IMG/VR virus record: IMGVR_UViG_3300028920_000001
Location: 186,001-250,000 of that record
DNA length: 64,000 bases
Reading direction: 5' to 3' (one strand)
A program made the position numbers and the translations under genes. The notes below the pieces were generated by a model that was given only the letters and a program-made list of their open reading frames with translations, was not told where the DNA came from and searched no databases. Positions 26,602-41,460 of this stretch are shown piece by piece (position 1 is the first letter of the stretch; each line of letters opens with the position of its first letter).

Positions 26602-26647
26602 CTATGCCCTGGGAAGAGTGAACTTCCCAGGGCCAGATGCGTCAGGT

Positions 26648-27124
26648 TCAGTTGGCGCTGAACAGGGCCGCCAACTCCGCCTTGGCGGGGTCCTTGGCGC
26701 ACTCTTCGGCTCGGAAGTGGGCCGCGAGCTGCCGGCCGTATCGGGCCGTGATGGTCCGGGCCTGCTCCAGCTCCTCTCCCTCGAGGGTGCCCTCTTCGGC
26801 AGCCTTCTTGGCGAGCTTGGTGCCCACGACCGCGTGGCTTGACATGAAGCCCTGCCGGTTGCGGGTCTCGGTGGAACCGTTGGACTGCTCGGAAGCCGTC
26901 TGCCGGTCGTACAGGATGCCCAAGCATCGCACGCAGAACTCGTCGTCGGACTCGACCTGTGCGACGATGTCCTTCTTGCTGCGGAAGGGGTACGGCTTGG
27001 GATTCTTGTTGACGCGCTTCTTGCGGGTCTTCTTCGGGGCGGTTGCGGTTTCGGCCTGCACGGGTGCTTCTGCGGCCTCTTCCGCCTGGACTTCGATCGT
27101 CTCTGCGGTGTTGGTGTTGCTCAT
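26648..27124 (-). CDS. conserved phage protein, RQTxxE...GFMSSHA family, paralogue 1
   Basis: LYDRQTASEQ...RQGFMSSHAV...YGRQLAAH; SD GGAG. Confidence 0.8.
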   Translation of the reverse strand: MSNTNTAETIEVQAEEAAEAPVQAETATAPKKTRKKRVNKNPKPYPFRSKKDIVAQVESDDEFCVRCLGILYDRQTASEQSNGSTETRNRQGFMSSHAVVGTKLAKKAAEEGTLEGEELEQARTITARYGRQLAAHFRAEECAKDPAKAELAALFSAN

Positions 27125-27299
27125 TTGGGATTCTCCTGGTTTGTCTGAGCGGAACAAGGTCCGCGTCGCAGTCCAGGGTACGTCGGCCCGCAGCGGATCT
27201 GCGCGGGTCTCTTCCCAATCAATTTTGCAACCTATTACTCAAAAACAAGACGGAAGCCGTATTGATCTGCGCGTACAGCAGCGCACGGAGGTCAAATCA

Positions 27300-27584
27300 A
27301 TGAGTGAGAATCAAGTCAAATCAAGTGAACCCATGGTCGAAGAGGATCTGCTGCACGAGCTGGTGGTGGGTCTGGTCCAGCGACCGGGAGAGGTCGAAAT
27401 CACCAACTTCGCCGGCCCTGAGGGTCACAAGAACCTGGTCATCCACTGCGCCAGTGAAGATCGTGGCCGGATCATCGGCAAGCAAGGTTGCAACATCGCG
27501 GCCCTGCGCGCCTACTTCCGCAGCTACGCCACCTTCGACGGAGGTCGCCGGCTGTACGTCCACCTGGAAAAGCTGGACGACTAA
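27300..27584 (+). CDS. khpA: KH-domain RNA-binding protein (KhpA/UPF0109-like)
   Basis: LVQRPGEV...DRGRIIGKQGCNIAALR (GxxG loop), about 94 aa. Confidence 0.8.
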   Translation: MSENQVKSSEPMVEEDLLHELVVGLVQRPGEVEITNFAGPEGHKNLVIHCASEDRGRIIGKQGCNIAALRAYFRSYATFDGGRRLYVHLEKLDD

Positions 27585-27787
27585 TGAAGTATCAGATACT
27601 CGTCCATGACGGCTGCAACGGCTGGAAGCAGGCAGGCGAAATGGAGATGGACCCTCCCAAGTCCGGGTCAATCAAAATCAACGATCCAGACTACGATCCT
27701 CCGGAGCGAGAGTTTATCGACCGAGGGAACGGAGTCTATGAAGAAGCGGAAGAAGGACTGGAGATGTGGGTCCCTATTGAGCCCTGA
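27584..27787 (+). CDS. hypothetical protein
   Basis: TAATG coupling. Confidence 0.6.
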   Translation: MKYQILVHDGCNGWKQAGEMEMDPPKSGSIKINDPDYDPPEREFIDRGNGVYEEAEEGLEMWVPIEP

Positions 27788-27799
27788 GGAGTCAAGCTA

Positions 27800-28114
27800 A
27801 TGCGCGTTTTTCGAATCCCAATTCGTTTGGTCATCAACGGGATAGCCGAAGTGGCTGTCCCGAACAATGGCACGGCGGAGGACGCTGAAAAGAAGGTTCG
27901 TGACCTGCAGTTCGCAGGCATAATGTCCCCTTCCTGCACCACAGTTATCAACATCAATGACTCTGACATTGAGTTTGTGGGAGCAGCACAGGAAAGAAAA
28001 ATATTGCACTCAGGAGCCGATCTACAATCTTCAATTTCAGTGGGACCCAACGATTTTGGTTTTGCTTCAGCCGACCCGGACATTCCAGACCCGGACCACG
28101 GAGGACCCAGTTGA
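27800..28114 (+). CDS. hypothetical protein
   Basis: GAGGAG SD. Confidence 0.6.
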   Translation: MRVFRIPIRLVINGIAEVAVPNNGTAEDAEKKVRDLQFAGIMSPSCTTVININDSDIEFVGAAQERKILHSGADLQSSISVGPNDFGFASADPDIPDPDHGGPS

Positions 28115-28281
28115 TGCGTCAAATCCAAAAGCCGCATCCGAAAGACCAACGGTTCTGGCCTGGTTACCGCACGGCCATCAGCAAGCACTTGGCGCGTAAG
28201 CAGGGAATCATGGTCATCAAGTTGCGGCCTGTGAAGATAGAGGCCGAAGACTTGCTTGGCCTGCCGAAAATCCTACCCTAA
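28114..28281 (+). CDS. 55-aa mini-protein resembling a fragment of the MoxR-like ATPase
   Basis: GGAGG SD; ...VKIEAEDLLGLPKILP versus ATPase SVLEAPDLLGLPTV. Confidence 0.55.
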   Translation: MRQIQKPHPKDQRFWPGYRTAISKHLARKQGIMVIKLRPVKIEAEDLLGLPKILP

Positions 28282-28386
28282 AGCGAACAACCGCCAGCGA
28301 CACAGCCCGGACAGCGTAAGTTGTCCGGGTCGCCGCGTATCTGGCGTAGGGCTGCAAGTCTCACGTTCGTCATCGTACCAATCAGT

Positions 28387-28623
28387 ATGATGAACGCAAC
28401 CGACGTGATGACGAGCAGGTTTTCGAAGCCATCCCGAATTCAGCAATTTCGGACCATCAACGAAACCGAGACTGCTGGAACCGTGGATGGGTATGAAGTT
28501 GACCCACACACCGCGTTCATCGTCTGTAGTGTCTACGACAAGGTCAATTCCCAAAACCAGCAAGCACTTGATCAACTTTCTACCCGAGACCTGATCGCAG
28601 TTTCCATTCAAATGGTGATGTAA
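28387..28623 (+). CDS. hypothetical protein (leaderless)
   Basis: CGTA-N9-ATG. Confidence 0.6.
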   Translation: MMNATDVMTSRFSKPSRIQQFRTINETETAGTVDGYEVDPHTAFIVCSVYDKVNSQNQQALDQLSTRDLIAVSIQMVM

Positions 28624-28829
28624 GAACAACCAGGGCAGTTCGCCTCCAACCATACTGACCCTGACCTGCGCCCGATGTGCTTTCGCGTTGCCTCGCACAT
28701 CGGGCGCAAATTTATGAATTATATAGCATAAATTTGATTCATATATGCCATATATTGATAAATTAAGTAGAAAACTTGATAGTTATTTTAACCACGCAAA
28801 CAGTTCTGTTCGGGCCGTAAAGTTGATCG

Positions 28830-29282
28830 ATGACCGAGCCAACCTTGGATATTCTTATCTTGGATATTGATGGGGTCCTTAACACTCGTGAGGATCTTCT
28901 TCAAGAGGTTGAAATTACCAAAGTTTGCATGGATGAGCTAGAGCGGATCGTTGAGACTACTGGCTGCAAAATTGTGATTAGTAGCTCTTGGCGGTGCCTG
29001 GGTAAAAAGCACATCGTGCGCATGTTCAATCATGCGCTAGGTCGAGTCGGCTCAGCCGTTCGAGCCATCGTTGGTATGACCCCTAACCGACTCAAAAATA
29101 GCGATTTGAGAGGTGACGAGATTCAGGCTTGGCTAGACCAGAATCCGAACGTCGGTAAAATCGTCATTCTAGACGATGACGTTGATATGGGTCATTTAAT
29201 ACCTCATTTGGTCAGGACGGACCCGGCAGTAGGCTTGACGCCTGAAATCGCAGACGAGGTGATCAGTCGATTTCAGAACTAA
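28830..29282 (+). CDS. HAD-superfamily phosphatase (Swiss Army Knife RNA-repair-like HAD)
   Basis: LDIDGVLN, IVISSSWR, RGDEI..WL, VILDD. Confidence 0.85.
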   Translation: MTEPTLDILILDIDGVLNTREDLLQEVEITKVCMDELERIVETTGCKIVISSSWRCLGKKHIVRMFNHALGRVGSAVRAIVGMTPNRLKNSDLRGDEIQAWLDQNPNVGKIVILDDDVDMGHLIPHLVRTDPAVGLTPEIADEVISRFQN

Positions 29283-29363
29283 AGCCCGCTTATGTGCTCT
29301 AATAAGAAATTCTCGAGCTCCAGTTGACAACTGCTCGCGAGCTCGTCGAGTTGGAAAAAGTTG

Positions 29364-29437
29364 TGGGACCCGTCGGGTTCGAACCGACAACAGCCCGCTT
29401 ATGAGGCGGGGGCTCTGACCGATTGAGCTAGAGTCCC
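29364..29437 (-). tRNA. tRNA with CAU anticodon (elongator Met or Ile2)
   Basis: GGGACTC/GGGTCCC acceptor; CCCGC-CTCATAA-GCGGG; GGTTCGAACCC; paired 1:72, so not initiator. Confidence 0.88.
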
Positions 29438-29694
29438 TTGAGTTCAGAAAACCATACAGTAAAGCTTTGAATCAATTATGTGGGAAGAAATTGATTGAAA
29501 TATCCCTATATACTTTGAAGCCGAGCTTCAAAAATTCCCTCGATGAAGCTCGGCTCGGCGGAAATCTCAGTGTGGCCATCGTACCTATCGGTATGAAACG
29601 GAACGCGGCCAGCATTTGCATGTCGATCGCATACGTGTGCCTGCCGCCGATCTGCGGCCCTGTAGATGCGCGCATTTCGCGCGTATCAGAACAC

Positions 29695-29945
29695 GTGCGG
29701 ATAGCGAATTGACGCTAACACTCCGACTCCGGTACTATCCGGTTGAAATGTCACGAAAGCCACTGAGGTCCGGCAGGCTGAGTAAGTCCGGTGTCCCTTT
29801 GGTGAAGGCAGCCCCCGGAAGGAGAGAAACCTTCCGGGCGGTGGCTTATACGTCTGAGACTATCTTTGAAAACTAGCTTTTGAAGGTCCTTAGGAAAAGA
29901 AGCGTTAGATACTTTTGAGCCGGGCTCCGAAGAACCCGGCTCTAG
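29695..29945 (+). ncRNA. candidate structured non-coding RNA
   Basis: promoter motif 29664-29685 with no ATG or SD following; stems AAGCCAC/GTGGCTT and CCCGGAAGG/CCTTCCGGG; hairpin at about 29917-29942. Confidence 0.4.
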
Positions 29946-29961
29946 CTGGTGTTGGCGTAAA

Positions 29962-30357
29962 TCACACGCCGAACTTGGCGCGGATTTGCTCCTGGGCCTC
30001 TTCGTCCAGGTGCATCTGCTGCTCTGCCCGGAAATGGGCTGCGAGCTGCTTGGTGTAGCGGCAAGGGATCTCCTCGGCCTTCCCTTCCTCCTCTTCCGTC
30101 AGCTCCTCGCCCGAGATCACCTTCTCGGCGATCTTGCTGCCCCACACTGCGTGCGAGGACATGAAGCCACGACGGTTCTTGTACTTGGTATCCTTCTCAT
30201 CCCGCTCGTCTTCCGTCTGACGCCGGTACAGGACGAGGATGCACTGCAGACGGAAGTCCGCATCCTCTTCCAGACGTGCCTTGACCTGCGCCTTGGTCAC
30301 GTACGGGTAGGAGTTGGTGGGGTTGGTGTTGATTGCAAAAGTCGGTTGGTTGCTCAT
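29962..30357 (-). CDS. RQTEDE...GFMSSHA family, paralogue 2
   Basis: highly similar to 37473-37874; promoter and GGAGG upstream. Confidence 0.85.
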   Translation of the reverse strand: MSNQPTFAINTNPTNSYPYVTKAQVKARLEEDADFRLQCILVLYRRQTEDERDEKDTKYKNRRGFMSSHAVWGSKIAEKVISGEELTEEEEGKAEEIPCRYTKQLAAHFRAEQQMHLDEEAQEQIRAKFGV

Positions 30358-30490
30358 GGTTGCGTTACCTCCAGTGTCCGATACGTTGCGCAGCAGGAGA
30401 CTTCCGGCAGCGGAAATGAGCAGCAACCAAACGTAAACGCTGATGGGGAAGAGTAGCAGCAGCGCGAATTAACTGATTTTAAATACTTTT

Positions 30491-30552
30491 CCCCGAAGCG
30501 TTCCTACTTCGTCCGGGTTTATCACTCTGTGTGAAATTACCGTCCGCTTCAA
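30491..30552 (-). ncRNA. conserved structured RNA motif, copy 1
   Basis: similar to 37979-38040; own promoter AAGT-N14-CGTA. Confidence 0.55.
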
Positions 30553-30849
30553 TCAAGTGTACGCATCAACTTGATCAACTTGCGGATTTTATAGGTCTAT
30601 GCCTAAAGAAAACAAACATCTTGGACGGCAGGACACCGCTCCCTCCCGCAGGAACCGTCTGGTTCAGAAGCGTTTGGTTCGTCCTGCCGCCAGGCCCTTA
30701 CTGTCGCTCACTGCGCCCCGTCGGAACGGATTACGTGAACCGGGAACCCACAGACTGTTACGCGGCAATTGATCGCATTTCCGCCTGTCTTTTGAAGGTG
30801 ATCCCCTAAAGCCAAAGAAAATGCGCCCATTTCGCGCGTAAAAAGGAAC

Positions 30850-31056
30850 ATGCGAGTTTCTCAGTTGATCGACGCTTTGAGCAAGCTGGACCAAGACGCG
30901 TTCGTTCGAGTTTCGGTTGGATGGGCTGCAGACACGGCCATCAGCAGTCGGTACGACGATACGTTGACGGTAGTGGCCAAAGGAGACACCGTGGAGATCG
31001 GTGGTTGGCTTCCCAACTGTGGCACTGAGTTGGAAATCTACGAGGACGAAGAATAA
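30850..31056 (+). CDS. hypothetical protein
   Basis: CGTA-N9-ATG. Confidence 0.7.
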   Translation: MRVSQLIDALSKLDQDAFVRVSVGWAADTAISSRYDDTLTVVAKGDTVEIGGWLPNCGTELEIYEDEE

Positions 31057-31280
31057 TGGCGGACAAAACCGAGGACGTCAGCGAAGAGATCCGTGTGTTC
31101 ATGGCCGAACGCCTGGCCCCGACTCAGATTTTGCTCGATTCTCTTCAAAAGCTGACCGAATACGACGACGTCGACTGGGATCAAGTCGAAGAAGAGGTGC
31201 TAGCTGCAGGGGACCGGCTAGCTGAAAGCTTGTTAGGCGAAATCAAAGACAAGCTGGAAGTGGACGAGGACGGCGAGTAA
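31056..31280 (+). CDS. acidic hypothetical protein
   Basis: TAATG coupling. Confidence 0.7.
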   Translation: MADKTEDVSEEIRVFMAERLAPTQILLDSLQKLTEYDDVDWDQVEEEVLAAGDRLAESLLGEIKDKLEVDEDGE

Positions 31281-31364
31281 ACAGGACTGAGGTCGCCGTT
31301 TCATTGCGGGTAAGCTCCTCAAAGACGGGCCGGAGATCATCCGGCCCGAGCCGTATCTCTCATC

Positions 31365-31652
31365 ATGGCCAATTCGATTGTTTGTTTCAGGCTCAGAAAA
31401 GGTGAAGCACCGGAGCTTGCTTCACCGACCATCTATCGAAATTGGAAGCGAGCCGTTCGAATCAACCTGGGCACCAAGGGCACCAAGGGACGTTTGGTCC
31501 TCGAAACCCAAAACAGCAAGGTCTTCGAGGCTGACGATTTGATTTGGGTTGGTGACGGATACGGCCCCTGTCATCTGGTTTTCTTGGATGTTGAGGCAGA
31601 CTTCCAAGAAACCTTGGCCTCTATTCGCAAACGAATACCGTCCGCAGATTGA
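31365..31652 (+). CDS. hypothetical protein
   Basis: CGTA-N9-ATG. Confidence 0.7.
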   Translation: MANSIVCFRLRKGEAPELASPTIYRNWKRAVRINLGTKGTKGRLVLETQNSKVFEADDLIWVGDGYGPCHLVFLDVEADFQETLASIRKRIPSAD

Positions 31653-31686
31653 CGCACAGCACGCGTATCTTTGACTGGAGGCACAC

Positions 31687-31896
31687 GTGAGAATTAAGGA
31701 CTTGCTCGCCCGGTTAGTGCACTATGATCCTGAAATGGAGGTTGTAGTGGTCAACGAAGAGACTGGCAGGCTGGAAGAGGCTTGCCTCGTCCAGGTTTGT
31801 AACACCAACCTTGTGCCAGACACGGGCGAAGAACAAGAAGGACCATTCCTAGTCATAAACTGGGTGCCAGACTGGGTGCCAGACGAAACTCGGTAA
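31687..31896 (+). CDS. hypothetical protein
   Basis: cassette promoter and SD. Confidence 0.75.
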   Translation: MRIKDLLARLVHYDPEMEVVVVNEETGRLEEACLVQVCNTNLVPDTGEEQEGPFLVINWVPDWVPDETR

Positions 31897-31934
31897 ATCT
31901 CACGCTAGTCCGCGTATCCGGGACTGGAGGCAAC

Positions 31935-32237
31935 ATGCAGGCTCAGATTCATTCAGCAACATACTGCGACAAAGATGAAGCAGTGTGGTCTGGATACGAC
32001 CCGGATCACGCACACCATGTGTTGACCCCAGAAGGTAGCCTTCTCGTCGTCCGCAACGACGAGGACGGCCCTGTGGTCTTTGCCCTACCCGGGGCCACGA
32101 ACAAGCTTATGGCGGCCGTCGAGCAGTTCCTTTCCCCGGACCCGGCAACGGGAGACGTGAGCTACGACGAGTCTGCATTCGACAGCTCTGCCCACACGGC
32201 AGCCCAGTTGTTGGCGGATTACCTACAAAACAAGTAA
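31935..32237 (+). CDS. hypothetical protein
   Basis: cassette promoter and SD. Confidence 0.75.
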   Translation: MQAQIHSATYCDKDEAVWSGYDPDHAHHVLTPEGSLLVVRNDEDGPVVFALPGATNKLMAAVEQFLSPDPATGDVSYDESAFDSSAHTAAQLLADYLQNK

Positions 32238-32281
32238 GGAAATCGCGCGTCAGCACGCGTATCCACGTCTGGAGGCAACAC

Positions 32282-32503
32282 GTGGATTTGACGATCATCA
32301 TCCTGTACGACGATGGGCTGTGTGAACACTACGTTGGTGCTTGGCCTGGCCCAATCCCTTCGGACGTAAGAAAAAGCCTGGCGAGGCAGTACCGGGCCGT
32401 CATTGACGGCGAACCTGGTTCTCACGAAGAGAATGCTCGTACCATCAGCTTCCGTGAAGTCCGGGCTGGTGCAGGTGATTTGGTCAACATCTGGAACTCG
32501 TAG
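32282..32503 (+). CDS. hypothetical protein
   Basis: cassette promoter and SD. Confidence 0.75.
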   Translation: MDLTIIILYDDGLCEHYVGAWPGPIPSDVRKSLARQYRAVIDGEPGSHEENARTISFREVRAGAGDLVNIWNS

Positions 32504-32541
32504 ATTCTACGCAAGCACGTGTATCCGTGACTGGAGGTAAT

Positions 32542-32817
32542 GTGGCGAAACCGAAATACGAAGCACTTCAAATCGACGACGCTTGCTGCGAACTCATCGC
32601 ACTCGACAAGGTAGTCCAAGTCGGATCCTGTCTCATCGGTATACTGGGAGGCAGAGCCGGTCAGTATACGCTCATTGGTCCAGCCGATGAGGTCAAGATG
32701 GTCAAGATGCTCTACGATGAGCACGAAAAGGAACTGAACGCACGGGAAGAGGATTACGACGAAGACGAGGGTGAATGGTTCGATTTGGTTCAAATCGCTC
32801 GTAAAGCGTTAGAGTAA
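32542..32817 (+). CDS. hypothetical protein
   Basis: cassette promoter and SD. Confidence 0.7.
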   Translation: MAKPKYEALQIDDACCELIALDKVVQVGSCLIGILGGRAGQYTLIGPADEVKMVKMLYDEHEKELNAREEDYDEDEGEWFDLVQIARKALE

Positions 32818-32855
32818 ATCACGCGCCAGTATACGTATCCGTGGGTGGAGGCGAC

Positions 32856-33077
32856 ATGCGATACGTAAGAATCAACTGTAACGTGAGCCCGGCCCGATAC
32901 AGCGGAACCCTATATGCGGGCACTGTGGCCACAGTGCGCGTTGTGAAGAGGTGGCAGCTGAAGATCGAGCTGCATGATGGCAATTGCTACTGGTTATACA
33001 AAGACCAGGTGGACGAAATCACACAGCAGGAATACGCAGCACAGCATCCGGTGATGGAGGCAACACATGAAACCTGA
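32856..33077 (+). CDS. SH3-like protein with degenerate IMES-like tail
   Basis: ends EITQQEYAAQHPVMEATHET. Confidence 0.65.
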   Translation: MRYVRINCNVSPARYSGTLYAGTVATVRVVKRWQLKIELHDGNCYWLYKDQVDEITQQEYAAQHPVMEATHET

Positions 33078-33348
33078 GCAAGTTCGCGAAGCGATCGAAG
33101 CGGTCTACGAGGTCCGGGACTATTCGGGTCGTGCCATGTTCGGCAAGCAGTGTGTGGGCATCGAGGTAGATGACCCAACCAAGGCCATACTCGAAATCGT
33201 GGAGGAGTTCTACCGGTCCACGGACACGGAAGAAGAGCCAGGCGCACTTCCGGACTTGTGCTACGAACTGAAGAATCATCGGGTTGATATGATGGGTCTC
33301 GGCAGCATCCTCTACTGGCCCAGCATCCCGTGGGAAGCGGACGAGTAG
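33067..33348 (+). CDS. hypothetical protein
   Basis: YSGRAMFGKQC...DMMG...YWP; SD. Confidence 0.75.
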   Translation: MKPEQVREAIEAVYEVRDYSGRAMFGKQCVGIEVDDPTKAILEIVEEFYRSTDTEEEPGALPDLCYELKNHRVDMMGLGSILYWPSIPWEADE

Positions 33349-33388
33349 ATCTCGCGCCAGCACGCGTATCGGTGAGTGGAGGCAACAC

Positions 33389-33802
33389 ATGGCGCAGATC
33401 ATCAGCAGGCGAGAGCACCACGAAGAGAAGGTCTACAACCTGGCCTTTCATTGGCGGGACGACCCGGGTGCCGGTTTTTCCTTCCCGTGTGACAAGGACG
33501 GGAACGTGGACGAAGACCACGTTCCCGAGAGCTATTACAAGTGCCTAAGCGGCGAATACGACGTCGTGGCTGATGGGGTAGTCTGCTACACCCATCGGTG
33601 GACGTCGCCAACCGTCATCAGGTGCACTTGTGGCGCAGAGGTGGAACTGTACGGATTCACGAACACCTGCCACGTATGTGAGGCCGACTACAACATGAGC
33701 GGCCAGAGGTTGGCTCCTCGATGCCAATGGGGTGAGGAAACCGGCGAGTCACTGTCGGACATCATGGCTGCGGACACCGACCCATGGGGAGGCGACTACT
33801 GA
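33389..33802 (+). CDS. hypothetical Zn-binding protein
   Basis: cassette promoter; CTCG...CHVC. Confidence 0.75.
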   Translation: MAQIISRREHHEEKVYNLAFHWRDDPGAGFSFPCDKDGNVDEDHVPESYYKCLSGEYDVVADGVVCYTHRWTSPTVIRCTCGAEVELYGFTNTCHVCEADYNMSGQRLAPRCQWGEETGESLSDIMAADTDPWGGDY

Positions 33803-34023
33803 TGGCGTGCTATCAGCGTGAACAAACCGGCAACTGCAACCACCATCAGTGTCAGTTCAGTTCGGATACTGATCACGGATACGAATGCGTGGAACTAGCT
33901 TCCGGTTTCTGTGAATGTGGTGAAGACTGCCTCGCCAAGTGTCCTCACTCTTGGCGAACTTCTGCTCGGGCAGAACAGGCAGACACAGCTTTTCGCAGGA
34001 AGTACCCAGAAATCAAATTGTAG
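33802..34023 (+). CDS. Cys-rich hypothetical protein
   Basis: coupled ORF with GGAGG. Confidence 0.6.
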   Translation: MACYQREQTGNCNHHQCQFSSDTDHGYECVELASGFCECGEDCLAKCPHSWRTSARAEQADTAFRRKYPEIKL

Positions 34024-34061
34024 ATCTTGCGCCAATCCGCGTATCCGTGATTGGAGGCAAC

Positions 34062-34271
34062 ATGAGCCACGTCACTCTGAATCAGGAAGAGGCTGAACAA
34101 GCCTCCAACTTCCTGTCTGCATACAGCGCTTACTTGGATAACCACGGATACAAACATGATCCGGATTGGAAGACCAAGATAGACCAAGCTGAAAAGCTGA
34201 TTGATATCCTGGAAGGACGACGACCCTGCGCTGAGTGTGGTTACTACCCTTGCTGTTGTGAGGCGACATGA
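34062..34271 (+). CDS. hypothetical protein
   Basis: cassette promoter and SD. Confidence 0.7.
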   Translation: MSHVTLNQEEAEQASNFLSAYSAYLDNHGYKHDPDWKTKIDQAEKLIDILEGRRPCAECGYYPCCCEAT

Positions 34272-34519
34272 CGTACCAAGTCTTCTATACCAACCACGGA
34301 TACTACAGCTCAGAGCAACCGGTCAATTTCCAGGATGCCCTGACCGTGGCGCGTGCCAGCGGTTTCGAAGCCCGAATCGACAGAGACGGGCAGCCTATTG
34401 GTGCCTGGTCTCCCTTGTACGGCTACAGGTCACTGTTCTACGTCCGGTTCTTCGGGGAGCTACCCACCGAAGCCGAAATTGACGTGGCTTTCGAAGAACT
34501 GAGACAATTCGGCTGGTAG
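34268..34519 (+). CDS. hypothetical protein
   Basis: SD, ATGA overlap. Confidence 0.7.
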   Translation: MTYQVFYTNHGYYSSEQPVNFQDALTVARASGFEARIDRDGQPIGAWSPLYGYRSLFYVRFFGELPTEAEIDVAFEELRQFGW

Positions 34520-34558
34520 ATTTCACGCTAGGCGTTGTATCCTTGACCGGAGGCGACG

Positions 34559-34711
34559 ATGGCACGGACCCAGAAGCAGACCAAACCCCGGAAGACCCGC
34601 AATATGATCGCCTTCGGGCTGATCGTCCAGGGTCGAAATCGGGTGATGCGTGACCGGCGTAAGCGCCGACCTGGCGATCGTACCGACAACTGGCGCAAGG
34701 AGCTGGACTGA
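34559..34711 (+). CDS. 50-aa Arg/Lys-rich protein
   Basis: cassette promoter and SD; MARTQKQTKPRK... Confidence 0.65.
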   Translation: MARTQKQTKPRKTRNMIAFGLIVQGRNRVMRDRRKRRPGDRTDNWRKELD

Positions 34712-35135
34712 TGCGAATCAAGCTTGGTGATCTTGTCAGAGTGGTTCAAGGAAGAAGGACGTGCAGCACTCACGAGCTGGCACGTTTGCTTCTGGAGCTA
34801 CCGGAGACCCCTATCCGAAAAGTGGAGCAGACCGTAGCTTGGTCCGGTCCTCTAGCAAAGGAAGAGGACGTCCAGATTGGCGTCCGAGCTTGGTAAGTTC
34901 ATTCCGTCCAATCGTCGAAGGCATTTGGAAAGGACTAACCCGTGGGAGCAAAGCTGACGATTGAGCAAGACCGTCTTGGTTGGTGGTGTGCGTACGAGCA
35001 CAGCCCGATTCCAGGCCAAGGAAAACGCATCGTCGTTGCCCGTAAGGACCGGAAGGAAGCAGAACGCGATGCCCGGACGTTCCTCAAGAAGGAACGTGAT
35101 GGGTCTATCTTCAAAGCAGAGCGATCGGTGGTGGG

Positions 35136-35498
35136 CGCGTAGATCGCCAGTCATCTGGCGTAAAGGCGAACATGACACTGCATGAACAACTTAAGACCCT
35201 GAATGATGATTTCGGGGTTGTCACTCACACCCGTGACAAGGATGAATTCAGCAGTGGGGAATTGTGGGACAACCTCGTATATACCTGCTTGCAAAGGCAG
35301 AGGCATGAACAAGTGCATCTTTCCTTTGTGATTAGGTATGATGCGTTGGGTGTTGTTGCCTATGACACCGTAGTCACGACCAAAATGATCACTCAGGAGC
35401 AAGCTCGTCAGTACCTTGACTTACTGAATCAAGTCACTGAAAAGGAAGAACAAGAAGACGCGTAGATCGCCAGTCATCTGGCGTAAAGGCGAACATGA
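35136..35498 (+). repeat. exact 40-bp direct repeat (35136-35175, 35459-35498) flanking one gene
   Basis: CGCGTAGATCGCCAGTCATCTGGCGTAAAGGCGAACATGA twice. Confidence 0.9.
35172..35465 (+). CDS. hypothetical protein
   Basis: between the 40-bp repeats. Confidence 0.75.
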   Translation: MTLHEQLKTLNDDFGVVTHTRDKDEFSSGELWDNLVYTCLQRQRHEQVHLSFVIRYDALGVVAYDTVVTTKMITQEQARQYLDLLNQVTEKEEQEDA

Positions 35499-35944
35499 GG
35501 CAGGCATTGATCACGGCAAGTCAGCAGAAGCCACTTCCGCCTTGGGTGCGGGATGTGGCAGATGCCGCCAGGGCTGGCGGAACTCTTGTTCCGGAATCCA
35601 CCTGGACCTGGCTTGGTGCCTGGCTGGCCACCCTAGCGGAAACCGAGCTGGACCTAGAGGATTGTCTCCCTCAGATCCTGTCGGCCGAATTCATCTATCT
35701 CCAGAACCACGCTAGATCCCAGGACCACCGAGAGTGGATCGAGGACCAGCTTCACCGAATCCAGGACGAAAACCCGGGCCAAACTGTTTGGTTCATTCCG
35801 GTTGACGAGCTGCTCTGCCTCCATCTGCAGGATGAGTACGGCAGTGACGGAATCCAGCTGGAGCGACTGGTGTTCGTGGGGACCGAACCCGAGCTACTTG
35901 CGGCCATTCATCAATTGACGCACGTCGACCTGCCGGTGCCGTAA
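35495..35944 (+). CDS. hypothetical protein
   Basis: cassette promoter. Confidence 0.75.
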   Translation: MRQALITASQQKPLPPWVRDVADAARAGGTLVPESTWTWLGAWLATLAETELDLEDCLPQILSAEFIYLQNHARSQDHREWIEDQLHRIQDENPGQTVWFIPVDELLCLHLQDEYGSDGIQLERLVFVGTEPELLAAIHQLTHVDLPVP

Positions 35945-35959
35945 ACACAAGAGGAAAGC

Positions 35960-36211
35960 ATGGCTGAAGCTGTTCGTCACCCGTACGATTTATGGGATGT
36001 CCTCAAAGGCCGAGTCATCGTGGCGGCAGATGAATGCAAAAGTCTGTTCGTCACCTGGAACCGGTCAGACACCTTTCAGGTCTTCTACGTAGATAAAGGA
36101 TTCGAGGACGTAACGTACCGCGAATGTCAAATTGCAACCGGATTCGACGTCCCAAGAAACGATCTCGAAGCGGCAATCCACGTCGCCGAGCAGCTTCTAC
36201 GAGAAAGCTAG
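35960..36211 (+). CDS. hypothetical protein
   Basis: GAGG SD. Confidence 0.7.
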   Translation: MAEAVRHPYDLWDVLKGRVIVAADECKSLFVTWNRSDTFQVFYVDKGFEDVTYRECQIATGFDVPRNDLEAAIHVAEQLLRES

Positions 36212-36305
36212 GCAGGTGTGATTGGTGCGGAGGCCGAATCGTTGAGGGTGACGAGGTTCACCCCGGTTATCGAGGCTGGCCCTGTTGCGAAGACTGTAAG
36301 GCGGT

Positions 36306-36551
36306 GTGATGGCTGTCGAGTACTTGATCGGTGAGGTTCCAGGAAGCGTGGAGGAACGGGTGGCGTTGGTAGACAGCGTTACCAGCGTCTGTGTGCCGGT
36401 TCACACCTTCAGAAGCCCGGAAGCGGCCGAGGATTTTCTCACGTACGTACGTGAAAACCAAGCTGGTGTTGACGTACGCCAGCTCAACCAACGGACCCTC
36501 AGCGGTTTGTGGAACAATTGGTGGGAAGAACGCGGCAAATCCCTGGCATAG
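36306..36551 (+). CDS. hypothetical protein
   Basis: ORF in run. Confidence 0.65.
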   Translation: MMAVEYLIGEVPGSVEERVALVDSVTSVCVPVHTFRSPEAAEDFLTYVRENQAGVDVRQLNQRTLSGLWNNWWEERGKSLA

Positions 36552-36681
36552 GGTTTAAAGAAATATATACCATATATTGCTGCCATCATGGCCTCTGATG
36601 CGGTCTTGACCGCAATCATTTTGGTAGGAAGTTGGTACCGACTCTCGCGTAAGCCAGCTGCCTAGTCGCGTATCCAACAAC

Positions 36682-36855
36682 ATGACGAGGCTACTCATAG
36701 CTCTGTTAGTGGCAGTTGGGCTTTACATCTTGCTGTTCATCTTCTTACCCATCACCCAGGAAACGGCCGTCGTCATCCCCCTACTCGGCAAGTTCGAGTG
36801 GTCCTTTGGTGGGCTAGGGTGTACGGGCATTTTCGCGATCATTATGGGGAAGTGA
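36682..36855 (+). CDS. small membrane protein
   Basis: CGTA-N9-ATG; hydrophobic. Confidence 0.6.
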   Translation: MTRLLIALLVAVGLYILLFIFLPITQETAVVIPLLGKFEWSFGGLGCTGIFAIIMGK

Positions 36856-36890
36856 GCGTAAATTTTAGGGTGGGGATCGTAGAAAAACCT

Positions 36891-37283
36891 ATGCTAAGAT
36901 TCGCTGCGATATATATCCTAACCATCGTTGTCAGTCTCCCATTGATGATTGCGGGAGGAGTGTGGGCAGCGCAAGCATACTTAGAACATAAGCAAGAAAT
37001 ATCTACCCAGGAGCCAGCTCCATTACCTGTCCTAGTTCTTCCTAAGACTACTACAGTCTCGGCTCCCTCGGCTCAGCCAACTGCCTCTGCAAAGCCGGCT
37101 CGAGAGAAACCTAAGCTCCACCCGACCAAGCCACGTTTTATCCGTAAAGCTCCCAAGCGGAAGCACGGACCGTGCTTTTACGGGGCGAATGGTCAATGCT
37201 ATCCGATAGACGCCTACTCAAACTGGCGTGCAACACCAGTGATGCGTCCAGACGGCACCTATCCGGAGCCCGGCGAATACTGA
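36891..37283 (+). CDS. membrane-anchored Pro/Ala-rich protein
   Basis: N-terminal TM segment, Pro-rich linker, CFYGANGQC. Confidence 0.65.
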   Translation: MLRFAAIYILTIVVSLPLMIAGGVWAAQAYLEHKQEISTQEPAPLPVLVLPKTTTVSAPSAQPTASAKPAREKPKLHPTKPRFIRKAPKRKHGPCFYGANGQCYPIDAYSNWRATPVMRPDGTYPEPGEY

Positions 37284-37472
37284 GATAGTCGTCCTCCTAC
37301 GGGCGTGCCACGGGTTGGTTACCGCTGGCCGGCCAAGGCACCAATATGCTGTGGTCTTGGACACCGCTGCACATATGATACTGTAGTGATAGCGGACGGC
37401 TATCCCACTTGAGTGTACGCTTGAGCCCGGCCAACTTCCGTCAGCCGGGCTCTGTGGGTTGGGTTGTCGGGA

Positions 37473-37874
37473 TCAGACCCCGAACTTCTCGTGAATCTGG
37501 GCGGCAGCTTCGTCGTCCAAGCAGGCCGTCTGCTCTGCTCGGTAGTGGGCCGTCAACTGCTTGCTGTACTTGCAGACGATCCCTTCGATCTTGCCGGACT
37601 CTTCCTCGGTCAGCTCCTCACCTGCGATCACCTTCTCGGCCAGCCGGCTGCCGTTCACGGCATGGCTGCTCATGAAGCCACGCTTGTTCTTCCACTTGGT
37701 GTCTTTGGTCTCCCGCTCGTCCTCGGTCTGCCGGCGATACAGGACCAGCAGGCACTGCAGGCGGAAGTCTGCGTCGTCGGCCAGCCGTTCGGCGACCTGC
37801 TTCTTGGTGACGTAGGGGTAGCTGTTGTTGGCTGCGGGGTTGATCGCGAAAGTCGGAATCTTGGTGTCGGTCAT
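37473..37874 (-). CDS. RQTEDE...GFMSSHA family, paralogue 3
   Basis: promoter and GGAGG upstream. Confidence 0.85.
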   Translation of the reverse strand: MTDTKIPTFAINPAANNSYPYVTKKQVAERLADDADFRLQCLLVLYRRQTEDERETKDTKWKNKRGFMSSHAVNGSRLAEKVIAGEELTEEESGKIEGIVCKYSKQLTAHYRAEQTACLDDEAAAQIHEKFGV

Positions 37875-37978
37875 TGTCGTTGCCTCCAGCCAAGGATACG
37901 GAGTTCGACCCGAGACCTACGCAGGGAATCTGTCGCGAAGCGTGAATCGGCCGGCTGGTCCGGATTTCGGACAGATCT

Positions 37979-38040
37979 CCCCGAAGCGTGTCTACTCCGT
38001 CCGGATTTACGGCCTTGTGCCGGGTCACCGTCCGCTTCAA
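37979..38040 (-). ncRNA. conserved structured RNA motif, copy 2
   Basis: own promoter AGAT-N14-CGTA; covarying inner stem. Confidence 0.55.
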
Positions 38041-38362
38041 AGATAAGTACGTAAAGATAAGGAAGATCTGCACCGATGACTGCCGCTGCGAGGTGGTTTT
38101 CCCACGGCTTCTTCGGCCCGTTCGGTTCTAGAAACCGCACGGTTGCCATCGGTGCAGTGAAGTATACGAAGTGGCCACCATGATTTCCGGCTGCGGAAGT
38201 GCGGATCCGGCCTGCGTATCCGACAGTGACAGCGGGCACGGTTGGCTTCTCAGAGCCGACCCAACTTCCGCTTGCAGCCCCTTGCCGTGACAGCCCACCT
38301 CCCGCCCGGACCATCGCGGCCGGGCGGGAGGAAATCTTGGGGTACGACAGGTACACGAGGAC

Positions 38363-38620
38363 ATGATGGCTGATTTGACCAAGCTCTGCGCCAGCAAAGA
38401 TCCGGATGACCTGTTTACCGTTTGCAATGGGACTTGCACGGCCGGGTTCGACCAAGACGGGTCTACGGGCCGAGAGATCTACGAGAACGGAATCCGACTC
38501 GGCCGAAAGCTCGGGTCAAACCCAAGAGCCAAGCTCTTCACGTACTCAAACGGCCAAACGGCCTGGTTTTTCGTGTACACAGACGAAGACGAGCTGGTCA
38601 CCCGGCTGAACACCATCTGA
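38363..38620 (+). CDS. hypothetical protein (paralogue of 21218)
   Basis: NGIRLGRKLGSNP..KLF. Confidence 0.7.
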   Translation: MMADLTKLCASKDPDDLFTVCNGTCTAGFDQDGSTGREIYENGIRLGRKLGSNPRAKLFTYSNGQTAWFFVYTDEDELVTRLNTI

Positions 38621-38668
38621 CCGGAAATCTCACGCCACGCCAGGTAGAAGAAACCGGAGGCAATTGAA

Positions 38669-39037
38669 ATGAAAAAGACGACCAAAGCTCACCTGATCGC
38701 GGTTTCCCTTCTCGGACTGGCCATGGCAGCAGCCCCTGCGTCCATGATTCTCAACGCGCCTGATGCCAACGCGCGGGTCGCCCATCCGGCTCCTTCCGCA
38801 AGCGAAGCTACTGTGGCTCCGGAGGCGTCCGTTCCGGCTCCTCCGGCCGTCGTTGAGCTGGACGAGGTCAAGGTCGTGGGGAACCCGAAGCCTGCGACGT
38901 CGGCCCGTCCTGCGGCCAAGAAGACCCACAAGAGCTGGACCTGTCACCGGGTGCCGCTCGCGCAGAACCGGCCTGCCCTGGCGACCAAGGACAGCGCCCC
39001 GGCCAACCAGACGGTCCAGCTCTGCGAGTGGCTGTAA
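38669..39037 (+). CDS. secreted Pro/Ala-rich protein
   Basis: signal peptide MKKTTK-hydrophobic; two C-terminal Cys. Confidence 0.7.
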   Translation: MKKTTKAHLIAVSLLGLAMAAAPASMILNAPDANARVAHPAPSASEATVAPEASVPAPPAVVELDEVKVVGNPKPATSARPAAKKTHKSWTCHRVPLAQNRPALATKDSAPANQTVQLCEWL

Positions 39038-39521
39038 GTCTCTTCGGGCAGGGGAGGCCCAAAACCTCCCCTGCCCGGCCTCCACCTCGGAGGTCCCAAC
39101 GGACTCGGCGTATCCGAGAGTGGAGGCGACACATGGTAGTTCTTTCACTCATCGCGATTTTCGTTCCCATCATTTGGGTAGCGTGTCCGAACCGGCCCTA
39201 TCGCCGAGATCTGGCCTGATGGCCAAAAGACGACCGGTGGCCTGCTAGGCGTTCATGGCCAGTCTGCCTTAGCGTTCCACCTAGAGCCCGGCCAGCGGAA
39301 GTTGGTCGGGCTCAAGCGTATCAGAGATTGGAGGCAACGCAAAATGAAGAGATGCCCACACTGTGGAAGGACTGACTGTGCGGTTCATGCCGAGGACGGT
39401 GGAGTGACCGAACTCTGCAGCGTGACTGGCAAGGTCATTCCTCCGGCCAAGAAGACCCGTTAAGGGTCCACGGCGTAAATGTGATAGCCTGCGGTGTACC
39501 TGAAATTGGAGGCAACGCGAA

Positions 39522-39836
39522 ATGAGCGAAGAGCATCATCCTAGGTACTGCAAGACCGTCGATCTCATCGGGCGCATTCGAAAAGCCCCTGCTGAGATCA
39601 GCTATCGCGATGCGGCCGTCAAGCTGATTCAGGAGGGAGCCTGTACGCCCGAGGAAGCGTTCTTCGCGGAAATGGGTGCCAGAATCTTGAACAAACCCTC
39701 CTGTGAGGTCTGTGGCGGTTTCTTGACCAACGACGAGGCCCGGGTCGGTGTCCTGTGCACCGGATGCCACGACGAGATGTTCGGCGACCGCGGACCGGTC
39801 GCACATCTCGGTACCCGACCCGTACGGATGTGGTGA
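39522..39836 (+). CDS. hypothetical Zn-finger protein
   Basis: cassette promoter; CEVC...CTGC. Confidence 0.7.
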   Translation: MSEEHHPRYCKTVDLIGRIRKAPAEISYRDAAVKLIQEGACTPEEAFFAEMGARILNKPSCEVCGGFLTNDEARVGVLCTGCHDEMFGDRGPVAHLGTRPVRMW

Positions 39837-39845
39837 GGAGGCAAG

Positions 39846-40049
39846 ATGCAAGATCTCGAGAGCCGTATCAACCAATTGCTGGAAGACTCTGACCGGGCCG
39901 ACAAGATGGGCCTGACCAACCGCAGCATGAAGCTGCTCAGTCAGGCGGCCGAACTCGAAACCGAGCTGCTGAAGAAGCGCAAGGAAGCGGCCAGGGCCCG
40001 GTCCGTCGAACGGATGGTGCGAGAAGCTCTCGCCGATTGTGGTCAGTAG
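39846..40049 (+). CDS. hypothetical coiled-coil protein
   Basis: GAGGAGG SD. Confidence 0.7.
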   Translation: MQDLESRINQLLEDSDRADKMGLTNRSMKLLSQAAELETELLKKRKEAARARSVERMVREALADCGQ

Positions 40050-40088
40050 ATCTTCCAAGCCTTCCCGTATTCGTGACTGGAGGTCACG

Positions 40089-40256
40089 ATGGCGCAAATT
40101 GGTTGGAAGGGTCAAGGGCAGGATGGGTCAAAGCTCTGCGTTCAACGGCATGGGCACAAGCGCGGAAAGGCCCGTCGTTCATACAACGCGGCTGAAAAGG
40201 CCGCTGAGACGCGAGTTCGGCAGGCCGGCAAGAAAATCTGCCGAGATTGGCAATAG
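40089..40256 (+). CDS. 55-aa basic protein
   Basis: cassette promoter and SD. Confidence 0.6.
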   Translation: MAQIGWKGQGQDGSKLCVQRHGHKRGKARRSYNAAEKAAETRVRQAGKKICRDWQ

Positions 40257-40499
40257 GGAAAGCAAGAGCCCGGAAATTCTCCGGGCTCACGCGTATCTGG
40301 AATTGTGATAGCGGCTCTTCTCGTCTTGCTAGCTCTCGCTATCTGGCTGCTTCTCCTCCTACGGACTGAGAAAAAGCCACAAGCGATTCCAGTCTGGGCG
40401 AATGTAAGGACCCGCTGTCCTTGTGTACAGACACGCATAGCACAAGTACCCTCTATGAAACCAAGGTTCGGAGGTGGCCACCCGCCTTAGGTACGTCAG

Positions 40500-41460
40500 C
40501 TTTACAACCATCAAAGAACGACTGCAGAGCCCGGAAATTCTCCGGGCTCATGCGTATTTGAGATCGGAAACGAGTTCGGCCGAACTTGAGAACTCTCGTA
40601 AACTCGCCCTATAACTCCGTACCTAGAAACATGGGAACACGGATTATGGAGATAGGAGGTGGTAAGAGACATATCTACGTAAATACCCTATACTTATAGG
40701 TATACGCCCCATATAGGATGGTATAGGGGATATAATGTAAATAGGATTCCCCAGTAGATATCTTTGGGTGGGGAAATTTATGCACCCCTTTGAAATGGGT
40801 CCTCGCGTTCGAAAGATATTCCTTTAAATTAGACGGGGCGAAGCCTTCTTTCGAAATATTTAATATTTTAAAGCAACATTCAAACTACACTTGAATGTTG
40901 GAACAATATGAGGTTTAGGAATAGTTGTAAGAACGTGTTTCCCACCAAATTGCCATTGTGACTGTTATTTGTCCGTTTGTATCAAAGCAAGAGTTAACTG
41001 CATCACGCACCACATGAATCCGGTCAGTTTTCCATTTATTAATTAATTCTTCTACTTCTTTTGGTTTTCCCACAAACAGTTTTAGTTGCATATTAAATAT
41101 TACATTTTAATCCTTAAAATATCAGCCACTGCTAACGTCTTTGATGGGTTTGATAAGGTTAATCTACTTGAAAATGTACGTCTGAACCAAATATAAAACT
41201 AGACCAAACATTAGGGCTGCAATTATATAAAATCCGGCTAACCCGAAGATTGTCTTGGCGCTAAATAAATTCTTACAACTACAGTCTTCTTCATTATGTA
41301 AGATCCTGCCACAATTACCACATCTTCGCATATTTTAATTTACACAGCTTCGAATCATAAAACAATATATTTCCGAAGTTTCGCGAAGCGAAACTAAACC
41401 CTTTTTGAGAAATATACTATTTGAGCCCTTTCAATTTTCGGGTCCTTCTTTGTACCTTAA
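40500..41460. other. about 1 kb non-coding region at the GC-rich/AT-rich boundary
   Basis: no ORF of 60 aa or more; composition switch; GCGAAGC hairpins. Confidence 0.6.

What the first reader, a model, noticed from the sequence alone, without database searches (positions are those of the whole stretch)
30491..38040. Duplicated about 60-nt structured RNA with its own promoter upstream of two paralogous genes
Seen (minus strand): TGAAGCGGACGGTAATTTCACACAGAGTGATAAACCCGGACGAAGTAGGAACGCTTCGGGG (30491-30551) and TGAAGCGGACGGTGACCCGGCACAAGGCCGTAAATCCGGACGGAGTAGACACGCTTCGGGG (37979-38039). The outer stem GAAGCG/CGCTTC is conserved, the inner stem covaries (TCAC/GTGA versus CGGC/GCCG), and the internal GGACGG and CCGGACGRAGTAG segments are conserved. 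Each copy begins about 8 nt after a consensus promoter and lies about 105-135 nt upstream of an RQTEDE-family gene that has its own second promoter. Inference: an unrecognised sRNA, riboswitch-like leader, or RNA partner of that protein.
Basis: partly seen in the sequence, partly recalled or inferred. Interest (0 to 1): 0.7.

Follow-up and report, generated by a model that had tools for sequence, protein, structure and literature searches.

The report
New structured small RNA in huge phages
The two sites are two copies of a conserved, folded small RNA that is in no RNA database, has its own promoter, and usually sits beside one uncharacterised phage gene family; what it does is still unknown.

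Summary
They are the only two copies in it. No Rfam 15 family matches.

About 50 distinct relatives turned up in huge-phage and environmental contigs. Comparative data show a folded nucleic acid:
- the variable hairpin covaries at all 5 pairs;
- the two GGACG segments pair with each other around a tandem G•A, which is Watson-Crick in one member;
- a small hairpin GWAG/CUUC and a 3' hairpin (GGGG plus tail, with a complement ending CCCC) also covary.

Promoter-like signals sit at a fixed distance upstream. In the window this is a phage-specific CGTAY-N7-TG site (30 found, 8.9 expected), not a sigma-70 consensus.

The RQTEDE gene is the only recurrent neighbour. Four of five contigs fetched by protein alone carry the RNA upstream. 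That gene has its own promoter-like site, the RNA-to-ATG spacing runs from 83 to 606 nt, and the RNA also occurs without the gene, often as convergent pairs.

Best reading: a separate small RNA of about 110-125 nt, probably protein-binding. Transcription could not be tested and the function is inferred.

The parts
30477..30551 (-). RNA copy A, conserved 5' domain: GAAG, helix P2 with a tandem G•A, variable hairpin P3, small hairpin GWAG/CUUC, then GGGG and tail.
   Evidence: Covariance model R1 scores 89.8 bits, E 2.5e-20. Sequence read.
30441..30494 (-). RNA copy A, 3' hairpin P4: GGGGAAAAGUA pairs with UACUCUUCCCC across a loop of about 26 nt.
   Evidence: P4 covaries across the family. A close relative (L065) has the one mismatch repaired.
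30550..30563 (-). Promoter-like site CGTACACTTGATTG directly upstream of RNA copy A. It places the transcript start at about the first G or A of GAAG.
   Evidence: The CGTAY-N7-TG pattern occurs 30 times against 8.9 expected.
37965..38039 (-). RNA copy B, conserved 5' domain.
   Evidence: Model R1 scores 88.6 bits, E 4.8e-20. Sequence read.
37918..37982 (-). RNA copy B, 3' hairpin P4: AUCUGUC pairs with GACAGAU, flanked by GGG/CCC, across a loop of about 37 nt.
38038..38051 (-). Promoter-like site CGTACTTATCTTTG directly upstream of RNA copy B.
29962..30357 (-). RQTEDE-family gene A (P0001, 131 aa), downstream of RNA copy A.
   Evidence: (phrog_21015, unknown function).
30372..30385 (-). Gene A's own promoter-like site, CGTATCGGACACTG, starting 28 nt before the ATG.
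37473..37874 (-). RQTEDE-family gene B (P0002, 133 aa), downstream of RNA copy B.
37887..37900 (-). Gene B's own promoter-like site, CGTATCCTTGGCTG, starting 26 nt before the ATG.
26648..27124 (-). Third, divergent RQTEDE paralog (39% identity). It has a promoter-like site at 27169-27182 but no RNA motif.

Best explanation
The two sites are two genes for a previously undescribed, conserved, structured small RNA of a huge phage.

Each copy is read on the minus strand from its own phage-type promoter (CGTAY-N7-TG), so the transcript starts at or next to the invariant GAAG.

The RNA folds into three elements:
- A long hairpin. Its lower helix is made by the two 'GGACG' segments pairing with each other around a tandem G•A. 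It is topped by a variable, covarying stem-loop.
- A short hairpin, GWAG/CUUC.
- A 3' hairpin made of GGGG plus about 8 nt and a complement that ends in CCCC.

The whole is about 110-125 nt. It is a transcription unit of its own, placed just upstream of an RQTEDE-family gene that has its own promoter.

I infer that it works as a protein-binding RNA. Its invariant non-Watson-Crick parts (5' GAAG, the tandem G•A, RAGWAG) would form the recognition surface. The most likely partner is the neighbouring RQTEDE protein, as in other RNA-protein pairs that are encoded side by side.

Shown: existence, conservation, fold, promoter-like signals, gene linkage.
Inferred: transcription, transcript ends, any binding, and the biological role.
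For: Family and fold:
- Pattern scans and model R1 give 52 hits (51 distinct) at E<=1e-5.
- P3 covaries at 5 of 5 pairs and is 95% paired; no shuffle out of 500 reached the observed score.
- The Watson-Crick positions of P2 are paired in at least 50 of 51 sequences. Compensations: G7-C71 to A-U twice, C10-G68 to U-A twice. In L101 the tandem G•A/A•G is replaced by G-C/A-U.
- In the GWAG/CUUC hairpin, A77-U88 becomes G-C three times and G78-C87 becomes U-A once; those two pairs are never broken.
- P4 has changes on both sides at 6 of 11 pairs.
- The variable region is 21-28 nt long, with differences that are not multiples of three, so it is not coding.

Own promoter:
- In the window, CGTAY-N7-TG occurs 30 times against 8.9 expected. 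Twenty-two of these lie within 26.7-40.3 kb, and the plus-strand ones sit just upstream of plus-strand ORFs.
- Across the family, TTGA peaks at -35 to -32 and [GA]TA at -11/-10 relative to the motif start. That is sigma-70 geometry ending at the first base of the motif.

Separate unit:
- The RQTEDE gene has its own GTAYC-N7-8-GGAGG site 25-29 nt before the ATG in most loci, and the RNA-to-ATG distance is 83-606 nt.
- Convergent pairs, each copy with its own promoter-like site and no ORF behind it, occur in L004, L037, L045 and L046.
- In L009 the RNA lies after the gene.

Linkage:
- RQTEDE is the only recurrent neighbour, in 10 non-redundant loci.
- Four of five contigs fetched through the protein alone carry the RNA upstream on the same strand.
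Against: - No transcript evidence. No RNA run holding the sequence was listed.
- No intrinsic terminator follows P4, so read-through into the RQTEDE gene is possible.
- G•U against A•C counts do not single out the transcribed strand.
- The RNA occurs in a 286-kb phage contig with no RQTEDE gene, though that contig is only about 60% complete. RQTEDE paralogs without the RNA are common. The pairing is therefore not obligatory.
- Nothing shows that the protein binds RNA: there is no Pfam, NCBIfam or PADLOC family and no clear structural relative.
- In 14 of 15 linked loci the RNA is upstream and co-oriented with the gene, which also fits a cis role.
Confidence: 0.45

Rival explanations
1. A cis-acting 5' leader (riboswitch, attenuator or protein-responsive leader). 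The domain would sense a ligand or factor and, through alternative pairings, control how much transcription from the upstream promoter reads on into the RQTEDE gene.
For: - The RNA is upstream and co-oriented with the gene in 14 of 15 linked loci.
- No terminator lies between RNA and gene.
- About 35 nearly invariant bases sit in non-helical or non-canonical positions, as in aptamers.
- Three segments compete for the same CUUC: the 5' GAAG, the internal GWAG, and downstream complements. That is the raw material of a switch.
Against: - The gene has its own conserved promoter-like site right at its ribosome-binding site.
- The RNA-to-ATG distance is 83-606 nt and no conserved expression platform lies over the ribosome-binding site.
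- The motif occurs in convergent pairs and tandem arrays with no ORF behind it, and 3' of the gene in L009.
- Genes downstream in loci without RQTEDE are unrelated to one another.
Confidence: 0.2
2. A sense/antisense module. The original unit would be a palindrome of two convergent promoters, each driving one motif RNA. Their 3' parts are complementary and form double-stranded RNA or cause transcriptional interference. This would act as a regulatory device of mobile elements (immunity, copy number, integrase control). The window's single copies would be decayed halves.
For: - Tail-to-tail pairs, each with its own promoter-like site, occur in L004, L037, L045 (two pairs in tandem, 271-nt period) and L046.
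- Degenerate right halves in many single-copy loci still keep the P4 complement.
- L049 keeps the inverted promoter copy but not the motif.
- A tyrosine integrase lies next to the pair in L004 and near the motif in L073.
Against: - The huge-phage copies, including both in the window, are single and still fully conserved, so the 5' domain has a function of its own.
- Compensatory changes lie within each copy: P2 U-A in L004(-) and L042(+), A-U in L045(+). They are not between the two halves.
Confidence: 0.12
3. A DNA-level element: a protein-binding site array, origin, recombination site or repeat (MITE/REP-like) whose hairpins form in DNA rather than RNA.
For: - Inverted pairs, nearly invariant 'stem' sequences and two direct GGACGG repeats.
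- Proximity to an integrase in two loci.
- No strand bias from G•U against A•C pairs.
Against: - Compensatory changes keep pairing in P3, P2, the small hairpin and P4. In L101 the second GGAC is turned into its complement, which destroys a direct repeat but perfects the helix.
- Promoter-like signals lie at a fixed distance on one side only.
- There are only two copies in 427 kb, and one true hit in the representative genomes of 185,579 species.
Confidence: 0.07
4. A new self-cleaving ribozyme or other catalytic RNA.
For: - Invariant junction nucleotides with variable peripheral stems.
- It occurs on either strand, in pairs and arrays, in phage and mobile-element DNA, as several ribozyme classes do (my own knowledge of twister, pistol and hatchet distribution).
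Against: - No match to any ribozyme family in Rfam 15.
- The fixed promoter position at the 5' end is not expected for a ribozyme.
- Nothing here points to a cleavage site.
Confidence: 0.05

Closest known systems
Side-by-side RNA-protein gene pairs, such as bacterial Y RNA with Rsr/Ro60 (my own knowledge).
   Same: A small, highly structured RNA with its own promoter is encoded right next to one particular protein gene, across many genomes. The conserved non-Watson-Crick elements could serve as a protein platform.
   Different: No sequence or fold relation to Y RNA (no Rfam hit). The protein is an all-helical domain of about 130 aa with no known relatives. Binding is untested. The RNA also occurs without the gene.
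Promoter-proximal phage RNA elements present twice per genome: HK022 putL/putR and lambda nutL/nutR with the N gene (my own knowledge).
   Same: Two copies per genome. The structured RNA comes at the very start of a transcript. A small phage protein gene lies immediately downstream, as N does after nutL.
   Different: Convergent pairs and arrays without downstream genes do not fit processive antitermination. The downstream gene has its own promoter. No sequence similarity.
Riboswitch aptamers with ACGR or AGUAG-like cores that I recalled as look-alikes: guanidine-II/III and the glutamine (glnA) RNA.
   Same: Short invariant purine-rich segments (GGACGR, AGUAG) next to variable hairpins.
   Different: Tested by cmscan at E<=10 on the bare elements; none of these families appears. 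Gene context (no transporters or nitrogen genes) and architecture differ.
Type III toxin-antitoxin RNAs (ToxI-like).
   Same: A non-coding RNA with its own promoter directly upstream of a small phage or mobile-element protein gene.
   Different: A single unit rather than tandem direct repeats. No terminator between RNA and gene. The protein is not a ToxN/AbiQ-type fold.

Membership tests
Any Rfam 15 family | Score at or above the family's gathering threshold. | tested here: not met
   The window at gathering threshold gives only 3 tRNAs and a group I intron elsewhere. E<=10 scans of 29.0-39.5 kb, of copy B alone and of the L004 pair give only chance-level hits far below threshold. Twenty related loci gave nothing near the motif.
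Riboswitch / cis-regulatory leader | The aptamer lies in the 5' UTR of the regulated gene, with an expression platform (terminator or RBS-sequestering helix) at a conserved distance. | tested here: not met
   RNA-to-ATG distance is 83-606 nt. A promoter-like site of the gene's own lies between them. No terminator. The motif lies 3' of the gene in L009 and in ORF-less pairs.
Riboswitch / cis-regulatory leader | Specific ligand binding that changes the fold. | not testable with these tools
   Needs in-line probing, SHAPE or ITC.
Independent small RNA gene | Own promoter at a fixed distance from a conserved 5' end. | tested here: met
   CGTAY-N7-TG occurs 30 times against 8.9 expected, and one site abuts each copy. 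Across the family, TTGA is concentrated at -35 to -32 (15 occurrences among 48 upstream regions) and [GA]TA at -11/-10 (24 occurrences).
Independent small RNA gene | A discrete transcript with a defined 3' end. | not testable with these tools
   No RNA run was listed. No canonical terminator; only the conserved P4 hairpin.
   No site in 29.8-30.8 kb or 37.3-38.3 kb. Some relatives (the L041/L047 group) do have TTGACA-17-TATGAT.
Kink-turn | A 3-nt bulge immediately 5' of tandem G•A/A•G on the bulged strand. | tested here: not met
   The tandem G•A lies inside a regular helix, flanked by two or three Watson-Crick pairs on both sides. The large 3' bulge is two pairs away and on the wrong side.
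Type III antitoxin RNA | Tandem direct repeats of the RNA unit upstream of the toxin gene. | tested here: not met
   One unit per gene; two units 7.5 kb apart in the genome.
REP/REPIN/MITE-type repeats | Many copies per genome; conservation explained by transposition rather than by structure. | tested here: not met
   Two copies in 427 kb and one or two in three other large phage contigs. Compensatory substitutions in four helices.
HEPN domain (for the RQTEDE protein; a lead only) | A helical bundle carrying an Rx4-6H motif. | tested here: inconclusive
   N-[RK]-R-G-F-M-S-S-H-A is nearly invariant: R65 in 43 of 48 sequences and H71 in 48 of 48, which reads as Rx5H. By my reading of the entry titles, at least six HEPN-type proteins are among the top 50 weak structural matches, but all have Z of about 3. 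There is no Pfam, PDB-sequence or PADLOC support.

The most novel reading that the evidence does not exclude
The RNA and the RQTEDE protein form a new kind of phage ribonucleoprotein. The helical protein carries a nearly invariant N[RK]RGFMSSHA (Rx5H) motif and may be a HEPN-like RNase or a nucleic-acid-binding regulator. The dedicated structured RNA would guide, activate or restrain it, for use early in infection, for host take-over or counter-defence. Alternatively, the RNA is the aptamer of a new riboswitch or ribozyme class carried by huge phages.
Probability: 0.2. Interest if true: 0.85.

Novelty: new member of a known kind. Interest (0 to 1): 0.65.

Why it matters
Huge phages carry hundreds of genes of unknown function, and almost nothing is known about their non-coding RNAs.

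This is an RNA with about 35 nearly invariant bases and four helices backed by compensatory changes. It is shared by phages whose neighbouring proteins are only 45-60% identical, and by unrelated environmental mobile elements. Conservation at that level usually marks an RNA that binds a conserved partner or ligand.

It also gives a first handle on a large uncharacterised protein family: 3,031 clusters at 50% identity reach E<=1e-3.

The RNA is short and its fold well defined, so binding, probing and cleavage tests can be run directly on synthetic material. No culture of the uncultivated phage is needed.

Tried and rejected
- Small ORF over the motif: both window copies can be read in one frame from TTG. 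However, the variable segment differs in length by amounts that are not multiples of three across relatives (21-28 nt). Rejected.
- Whole-element long hairpin (motif pairing with a downstream inverted copy): seen in RNAfold for L004, L037, L045 and L046. The model shows these are second motif copies on the other strand, and the compensatory changes lie within each copy. Kept only as a rival.
- Tail CCGUCC pairing back to GGACGG: present in many G-variants but not in A-variants (read by eye). The tail is better explained as the 5' strand of P4.
- MAFFT plus RNAalifold on the raw alignment failed to find P3 because the hairpin was misaligned. This was solved with a model-based alignment.
- RNA-seq evidence: none was listed, either for the window or for L004.
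- Literature search by sequence words found only coincidental 11-mers, one in a group II intron oligo. A keyword search found no description.
- Relaxed viral scan: both new hits (L105, L106) fail the model. The Subdoligranulum hit L091 lies inside an aldose-1-epimerase-like ORF.
- Protein function: Pfam, PHROGs, NCBIfam, PADLOC, PDB by sequence and by fold, AlphaFold DB clusters and the ESM Atlas gave no named relative.
- Protein-RNA complex prediction: the job was not folded and gives no evidence either way.
- Origin of replication: there is no GC-skew turn at the site.

Full report
**1. What is in the window**

Both quoted sequences are present on the minus strand at the stated coordinates. 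A pattern made of their shared blocks matches exactly twice in the window; none of 100 shuffles gave a match. The window is bases 186,001-250,000 of a complete 426,960-bp virus record with direct terminal repeats. The pattern and a covariance model each find only these two copies in the genome.

Each copy lies upstream of a paralogous gene: P0001 at 29962-30357 and P0002 at 37473-37874. A third, more distant paralog at 26648-27124 has no copy of the motif.

No Rfam 15 family matches, either at gathering thresholds or in permissive scans of the bare elements.

**2. Relatives**

- Exact-pattern scans found true members in four other IMG/VR contigs, three of them 274-393 kb.
- They found members in about 35 metagenome contigs.
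- They found one member, on a 1.5-kb contig of a MAG, among the representative genomes of 185,579 species. A second candidate there lies inside an aldose-1-epimerase-like ORF and is a chance hit.
- A model built from 11 equal-length members (R1) finds 52 hits, 51 distinct, at E<=1e-5.

The element therefore belongs to phages and other mobile DNA from sediments, soils and wetlands, not to bacterial chromosomes.

**3. Fold**

The segment between the conserved blocks is 21-28 nt long, with differences that are not multiples of three, so the region is not coding. On model-based alignments:

- *Variable hairpin P3.* Changes on both sides at all 5 pairs, 95% of cells paired. No shuffle out of 500 and no slid register comes close.
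- *Helix P2.* The two 'GGACG' blocks pair with each other: C6-G72, G7-C71, G8•A70, A9•G69, C10-G68, G11-C67, G12-C66. The Watson-Crick positions are paired in at least 50 of 51 sequences. G7-C71 becomes A-U in two copies. C10-G68 becomes U-A in two others. In L101 the tandem G•A/A•G is replaced by G-C/A-U, giving a perfect 7-bp helix.
- *Small hairpin.* CUUC pairs best with the nearby GWAG. A77-U88 becomes G-C three times and G78-C87 becomes U-A once, and those two pairs are never broken. The 5' GAAG is invariant and may be an alternative partner of CUUC. One copy, L037(-), does compensate there.
- *3' hairpin P4.* The GGGG that follows, plus about 8 nt, pairs with a complement ending in CCCC across an 18-37-nt loop. 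Six of 11 pairs change on both sides.

Both window copies have all four elements. This gives an RNA of about 110-125 nt if it ends after P4.

**4. Promoter**

The sigma-70 consensus scan finds nothing next to the window copies. However, both copies, all three RQTEDE paralogs and many small ORFs between them are preceded by CGTAY-N7-TG. The window has 30 such sites against 8.9 expected. Twenty-two lie within 26.7-40.3 kb, and the plus-strand ones sit just upstream of plus-strand ORFs.

Across the family, TTGA peaks at -35 to -32 and [GA]TA at -11/-10 relative to the first motif base. That is sigma-70 geometry with the start point at the motif's first nucleotides. Some members have a textbook TTGACA-17-TATGAT.

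This is the main evidence that the element is transcribed in the stated direction and forms the 5' end of its transcript. G•U against A•C counts do not add strand information. No RNA-seq run was listed, so transcription remains inferred.

**5. Context**

- An all-against-all comparison of ORFs within 3 kb finds one recurrent neighbour, the RQTEDE family, in 10 non-redundant loci.
- As an independent test I fetched five contigs through distant RQTEDE proteins only. Four carry the motif upstream on the same strand.
- The link is not obligatory. In L009 the RNA lies 60 nt after the gene. Paralogs without the RNA are common. A 286-kb phage contig has a motif pair but no RQTEDE gene. Many small contigs have the motif with unrelated or no ORFs downstream.
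- The RQTEDE gene has its own GTAYC-N7-8-GGAGG site 25-29 nt before the ATG in most loci, and the RNA-to-ATG distance runs from 83 to 606 nt.
- In several loci two motif copies face each other tail to tail, each with its own promoter-like site. In L045 two such pairs stand in tandem. In many single-copy loci a degenerate right half survives mainly as the P4 complement.

**6. The protein**

P0002 models confidently (pLDDT 85) as an all-helical domain. It has no named relative by Pfam, PHROGs (phrog_21015, unknown function), NCBIfam, PADLOC, PDB sequence or fold.

The family is large: 3,031 clusters at 50% identity reach E<=1e-3. Six of ten longer members scanned carry a weak C-terminal winged-helix match.

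A nearly invariant N-[RK]-R-G-F-M-S-S-H-A reads as Rx5H. By my reading of the entry titles, at least six HEPN-type proteins appear among the weak structural matches, at Z of about 3. I treat that as a lead, not a finding.

**7. Interpretation**

That this is a real, conserved, structured nucleic-acid element of a new family is well supported.

- *Best fit.* A separate small RNA gene explains the fixed promoter, the conserved 3' hairpin, the gene's own promoter, the variable spacing, the ORF-less pairs and the L009 arrangement.
- *Function (inferred).* Binding a protein, most plausibly the neighbouring RQTEDE protein, is inferred from gene linkage and from the invariant non-canonical elements.
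- *Second choice.* A cis-regulatory leader, given the near-constant upstream, co-oriented position and the competing pairings for CUUC.
- *Remaining rivals.* A convergent sense/antisense module, a DNA-level element and a ribozyme.

**8. Novelty**

I found no database family and no paper describing it. I file it as a new family within a known kind, phage-borne structured small RNAs. A more novel reading, a new RNA-protein system or a new aptamer class, is not excluded.

Noticed in passing
window 26000-40500: A GC-rich island (GC 0.54-0.60) between flanks of 0.44-0.46 on the left and 0.33-0.42 on the right. It holds 22 of the 30 CGTAY-N7-TG sites, all three RQTEDE paralogs and both RNA copies. 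Ten of its ORFs that I scanned have no named family. It looks like a distinct module, possibly acquired, or an early-gene block in which genes have their own promoter-like sites.
   Followed up: partly
window 8739-8996 (+), 9172-9244 (+), 10791-10885 (+), 29364-29437 (-): A group I intron (Rfam, 65 bits) lies 175 nt upstream of a tRNA gene. Two further tRNA genes are present, one of them 95 nt long.
   Followed up: no
window 26648-27124 (-), promoter-like site 27169-27182: A third RQTEDE paralog (39% identity to P0002) with the promoter-like site but no RNA motif. It has Q at position 65 of the N[RK]RGFMSSHA motif.
   Followed up: partly
L045 727-1158 (also L051): Two convergent motif pairs in tandem with a 271-nt period and no convincing ORF. 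This is an array of four RNA units, each with its own promoter-like site.
   Followed up: partly
L049, about 215 bp downstream of the motif promoter: An inverted copy of the promoter region (TTTGATCGGG ... TGTAGT) is kept, but the motif it would drive is gone. It would give an antisense transcript over the 3' part of the motif RNA.
   Followed up: no
L056, about 3900-4060: A near-perfect palindrome with long arms (roughly 60-70 paired positions in the predicted fold) just downstream of the motif. It lies next to a Prim-Pol/DUF5906 primase-helicase-like gene.
   Followed up: no
L004 4588-5424 (+) and L073: A tyrosine integrase (Pfam Phage_integrase, E 5e-30) lies 120 nt upstream of the convergent motif pair in a 286-kb phage contig. 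By eye, the N-terminus of an ORF downstream of the motif in L073 resembles it.
   Followed up: partly
L066 10185-11516: Two divergent motif copies flank a 195-aa ORF with no Pfam match. A T5orf172/MUG113-type gene and a DUF2786 gene lie nearby.
   Followed up: no
proteins P0161, P0172, P0179, P0183, P0194, P0196: Longer members of the RQTEDE family carry a C-terminal winged-helix HTH, with weak MarR/TrmB/Rrf2-type hits. This hints at a nucleic-acid-related role for the family.
   Followed up: partly
window 29515-29579 (+): A sub-threshold match to the queA RNA motif (26.8 bits against a gathering score of 52.6, E 0.13), between the tRNA and the end of P0001. Probably chance.
   Followed up: no
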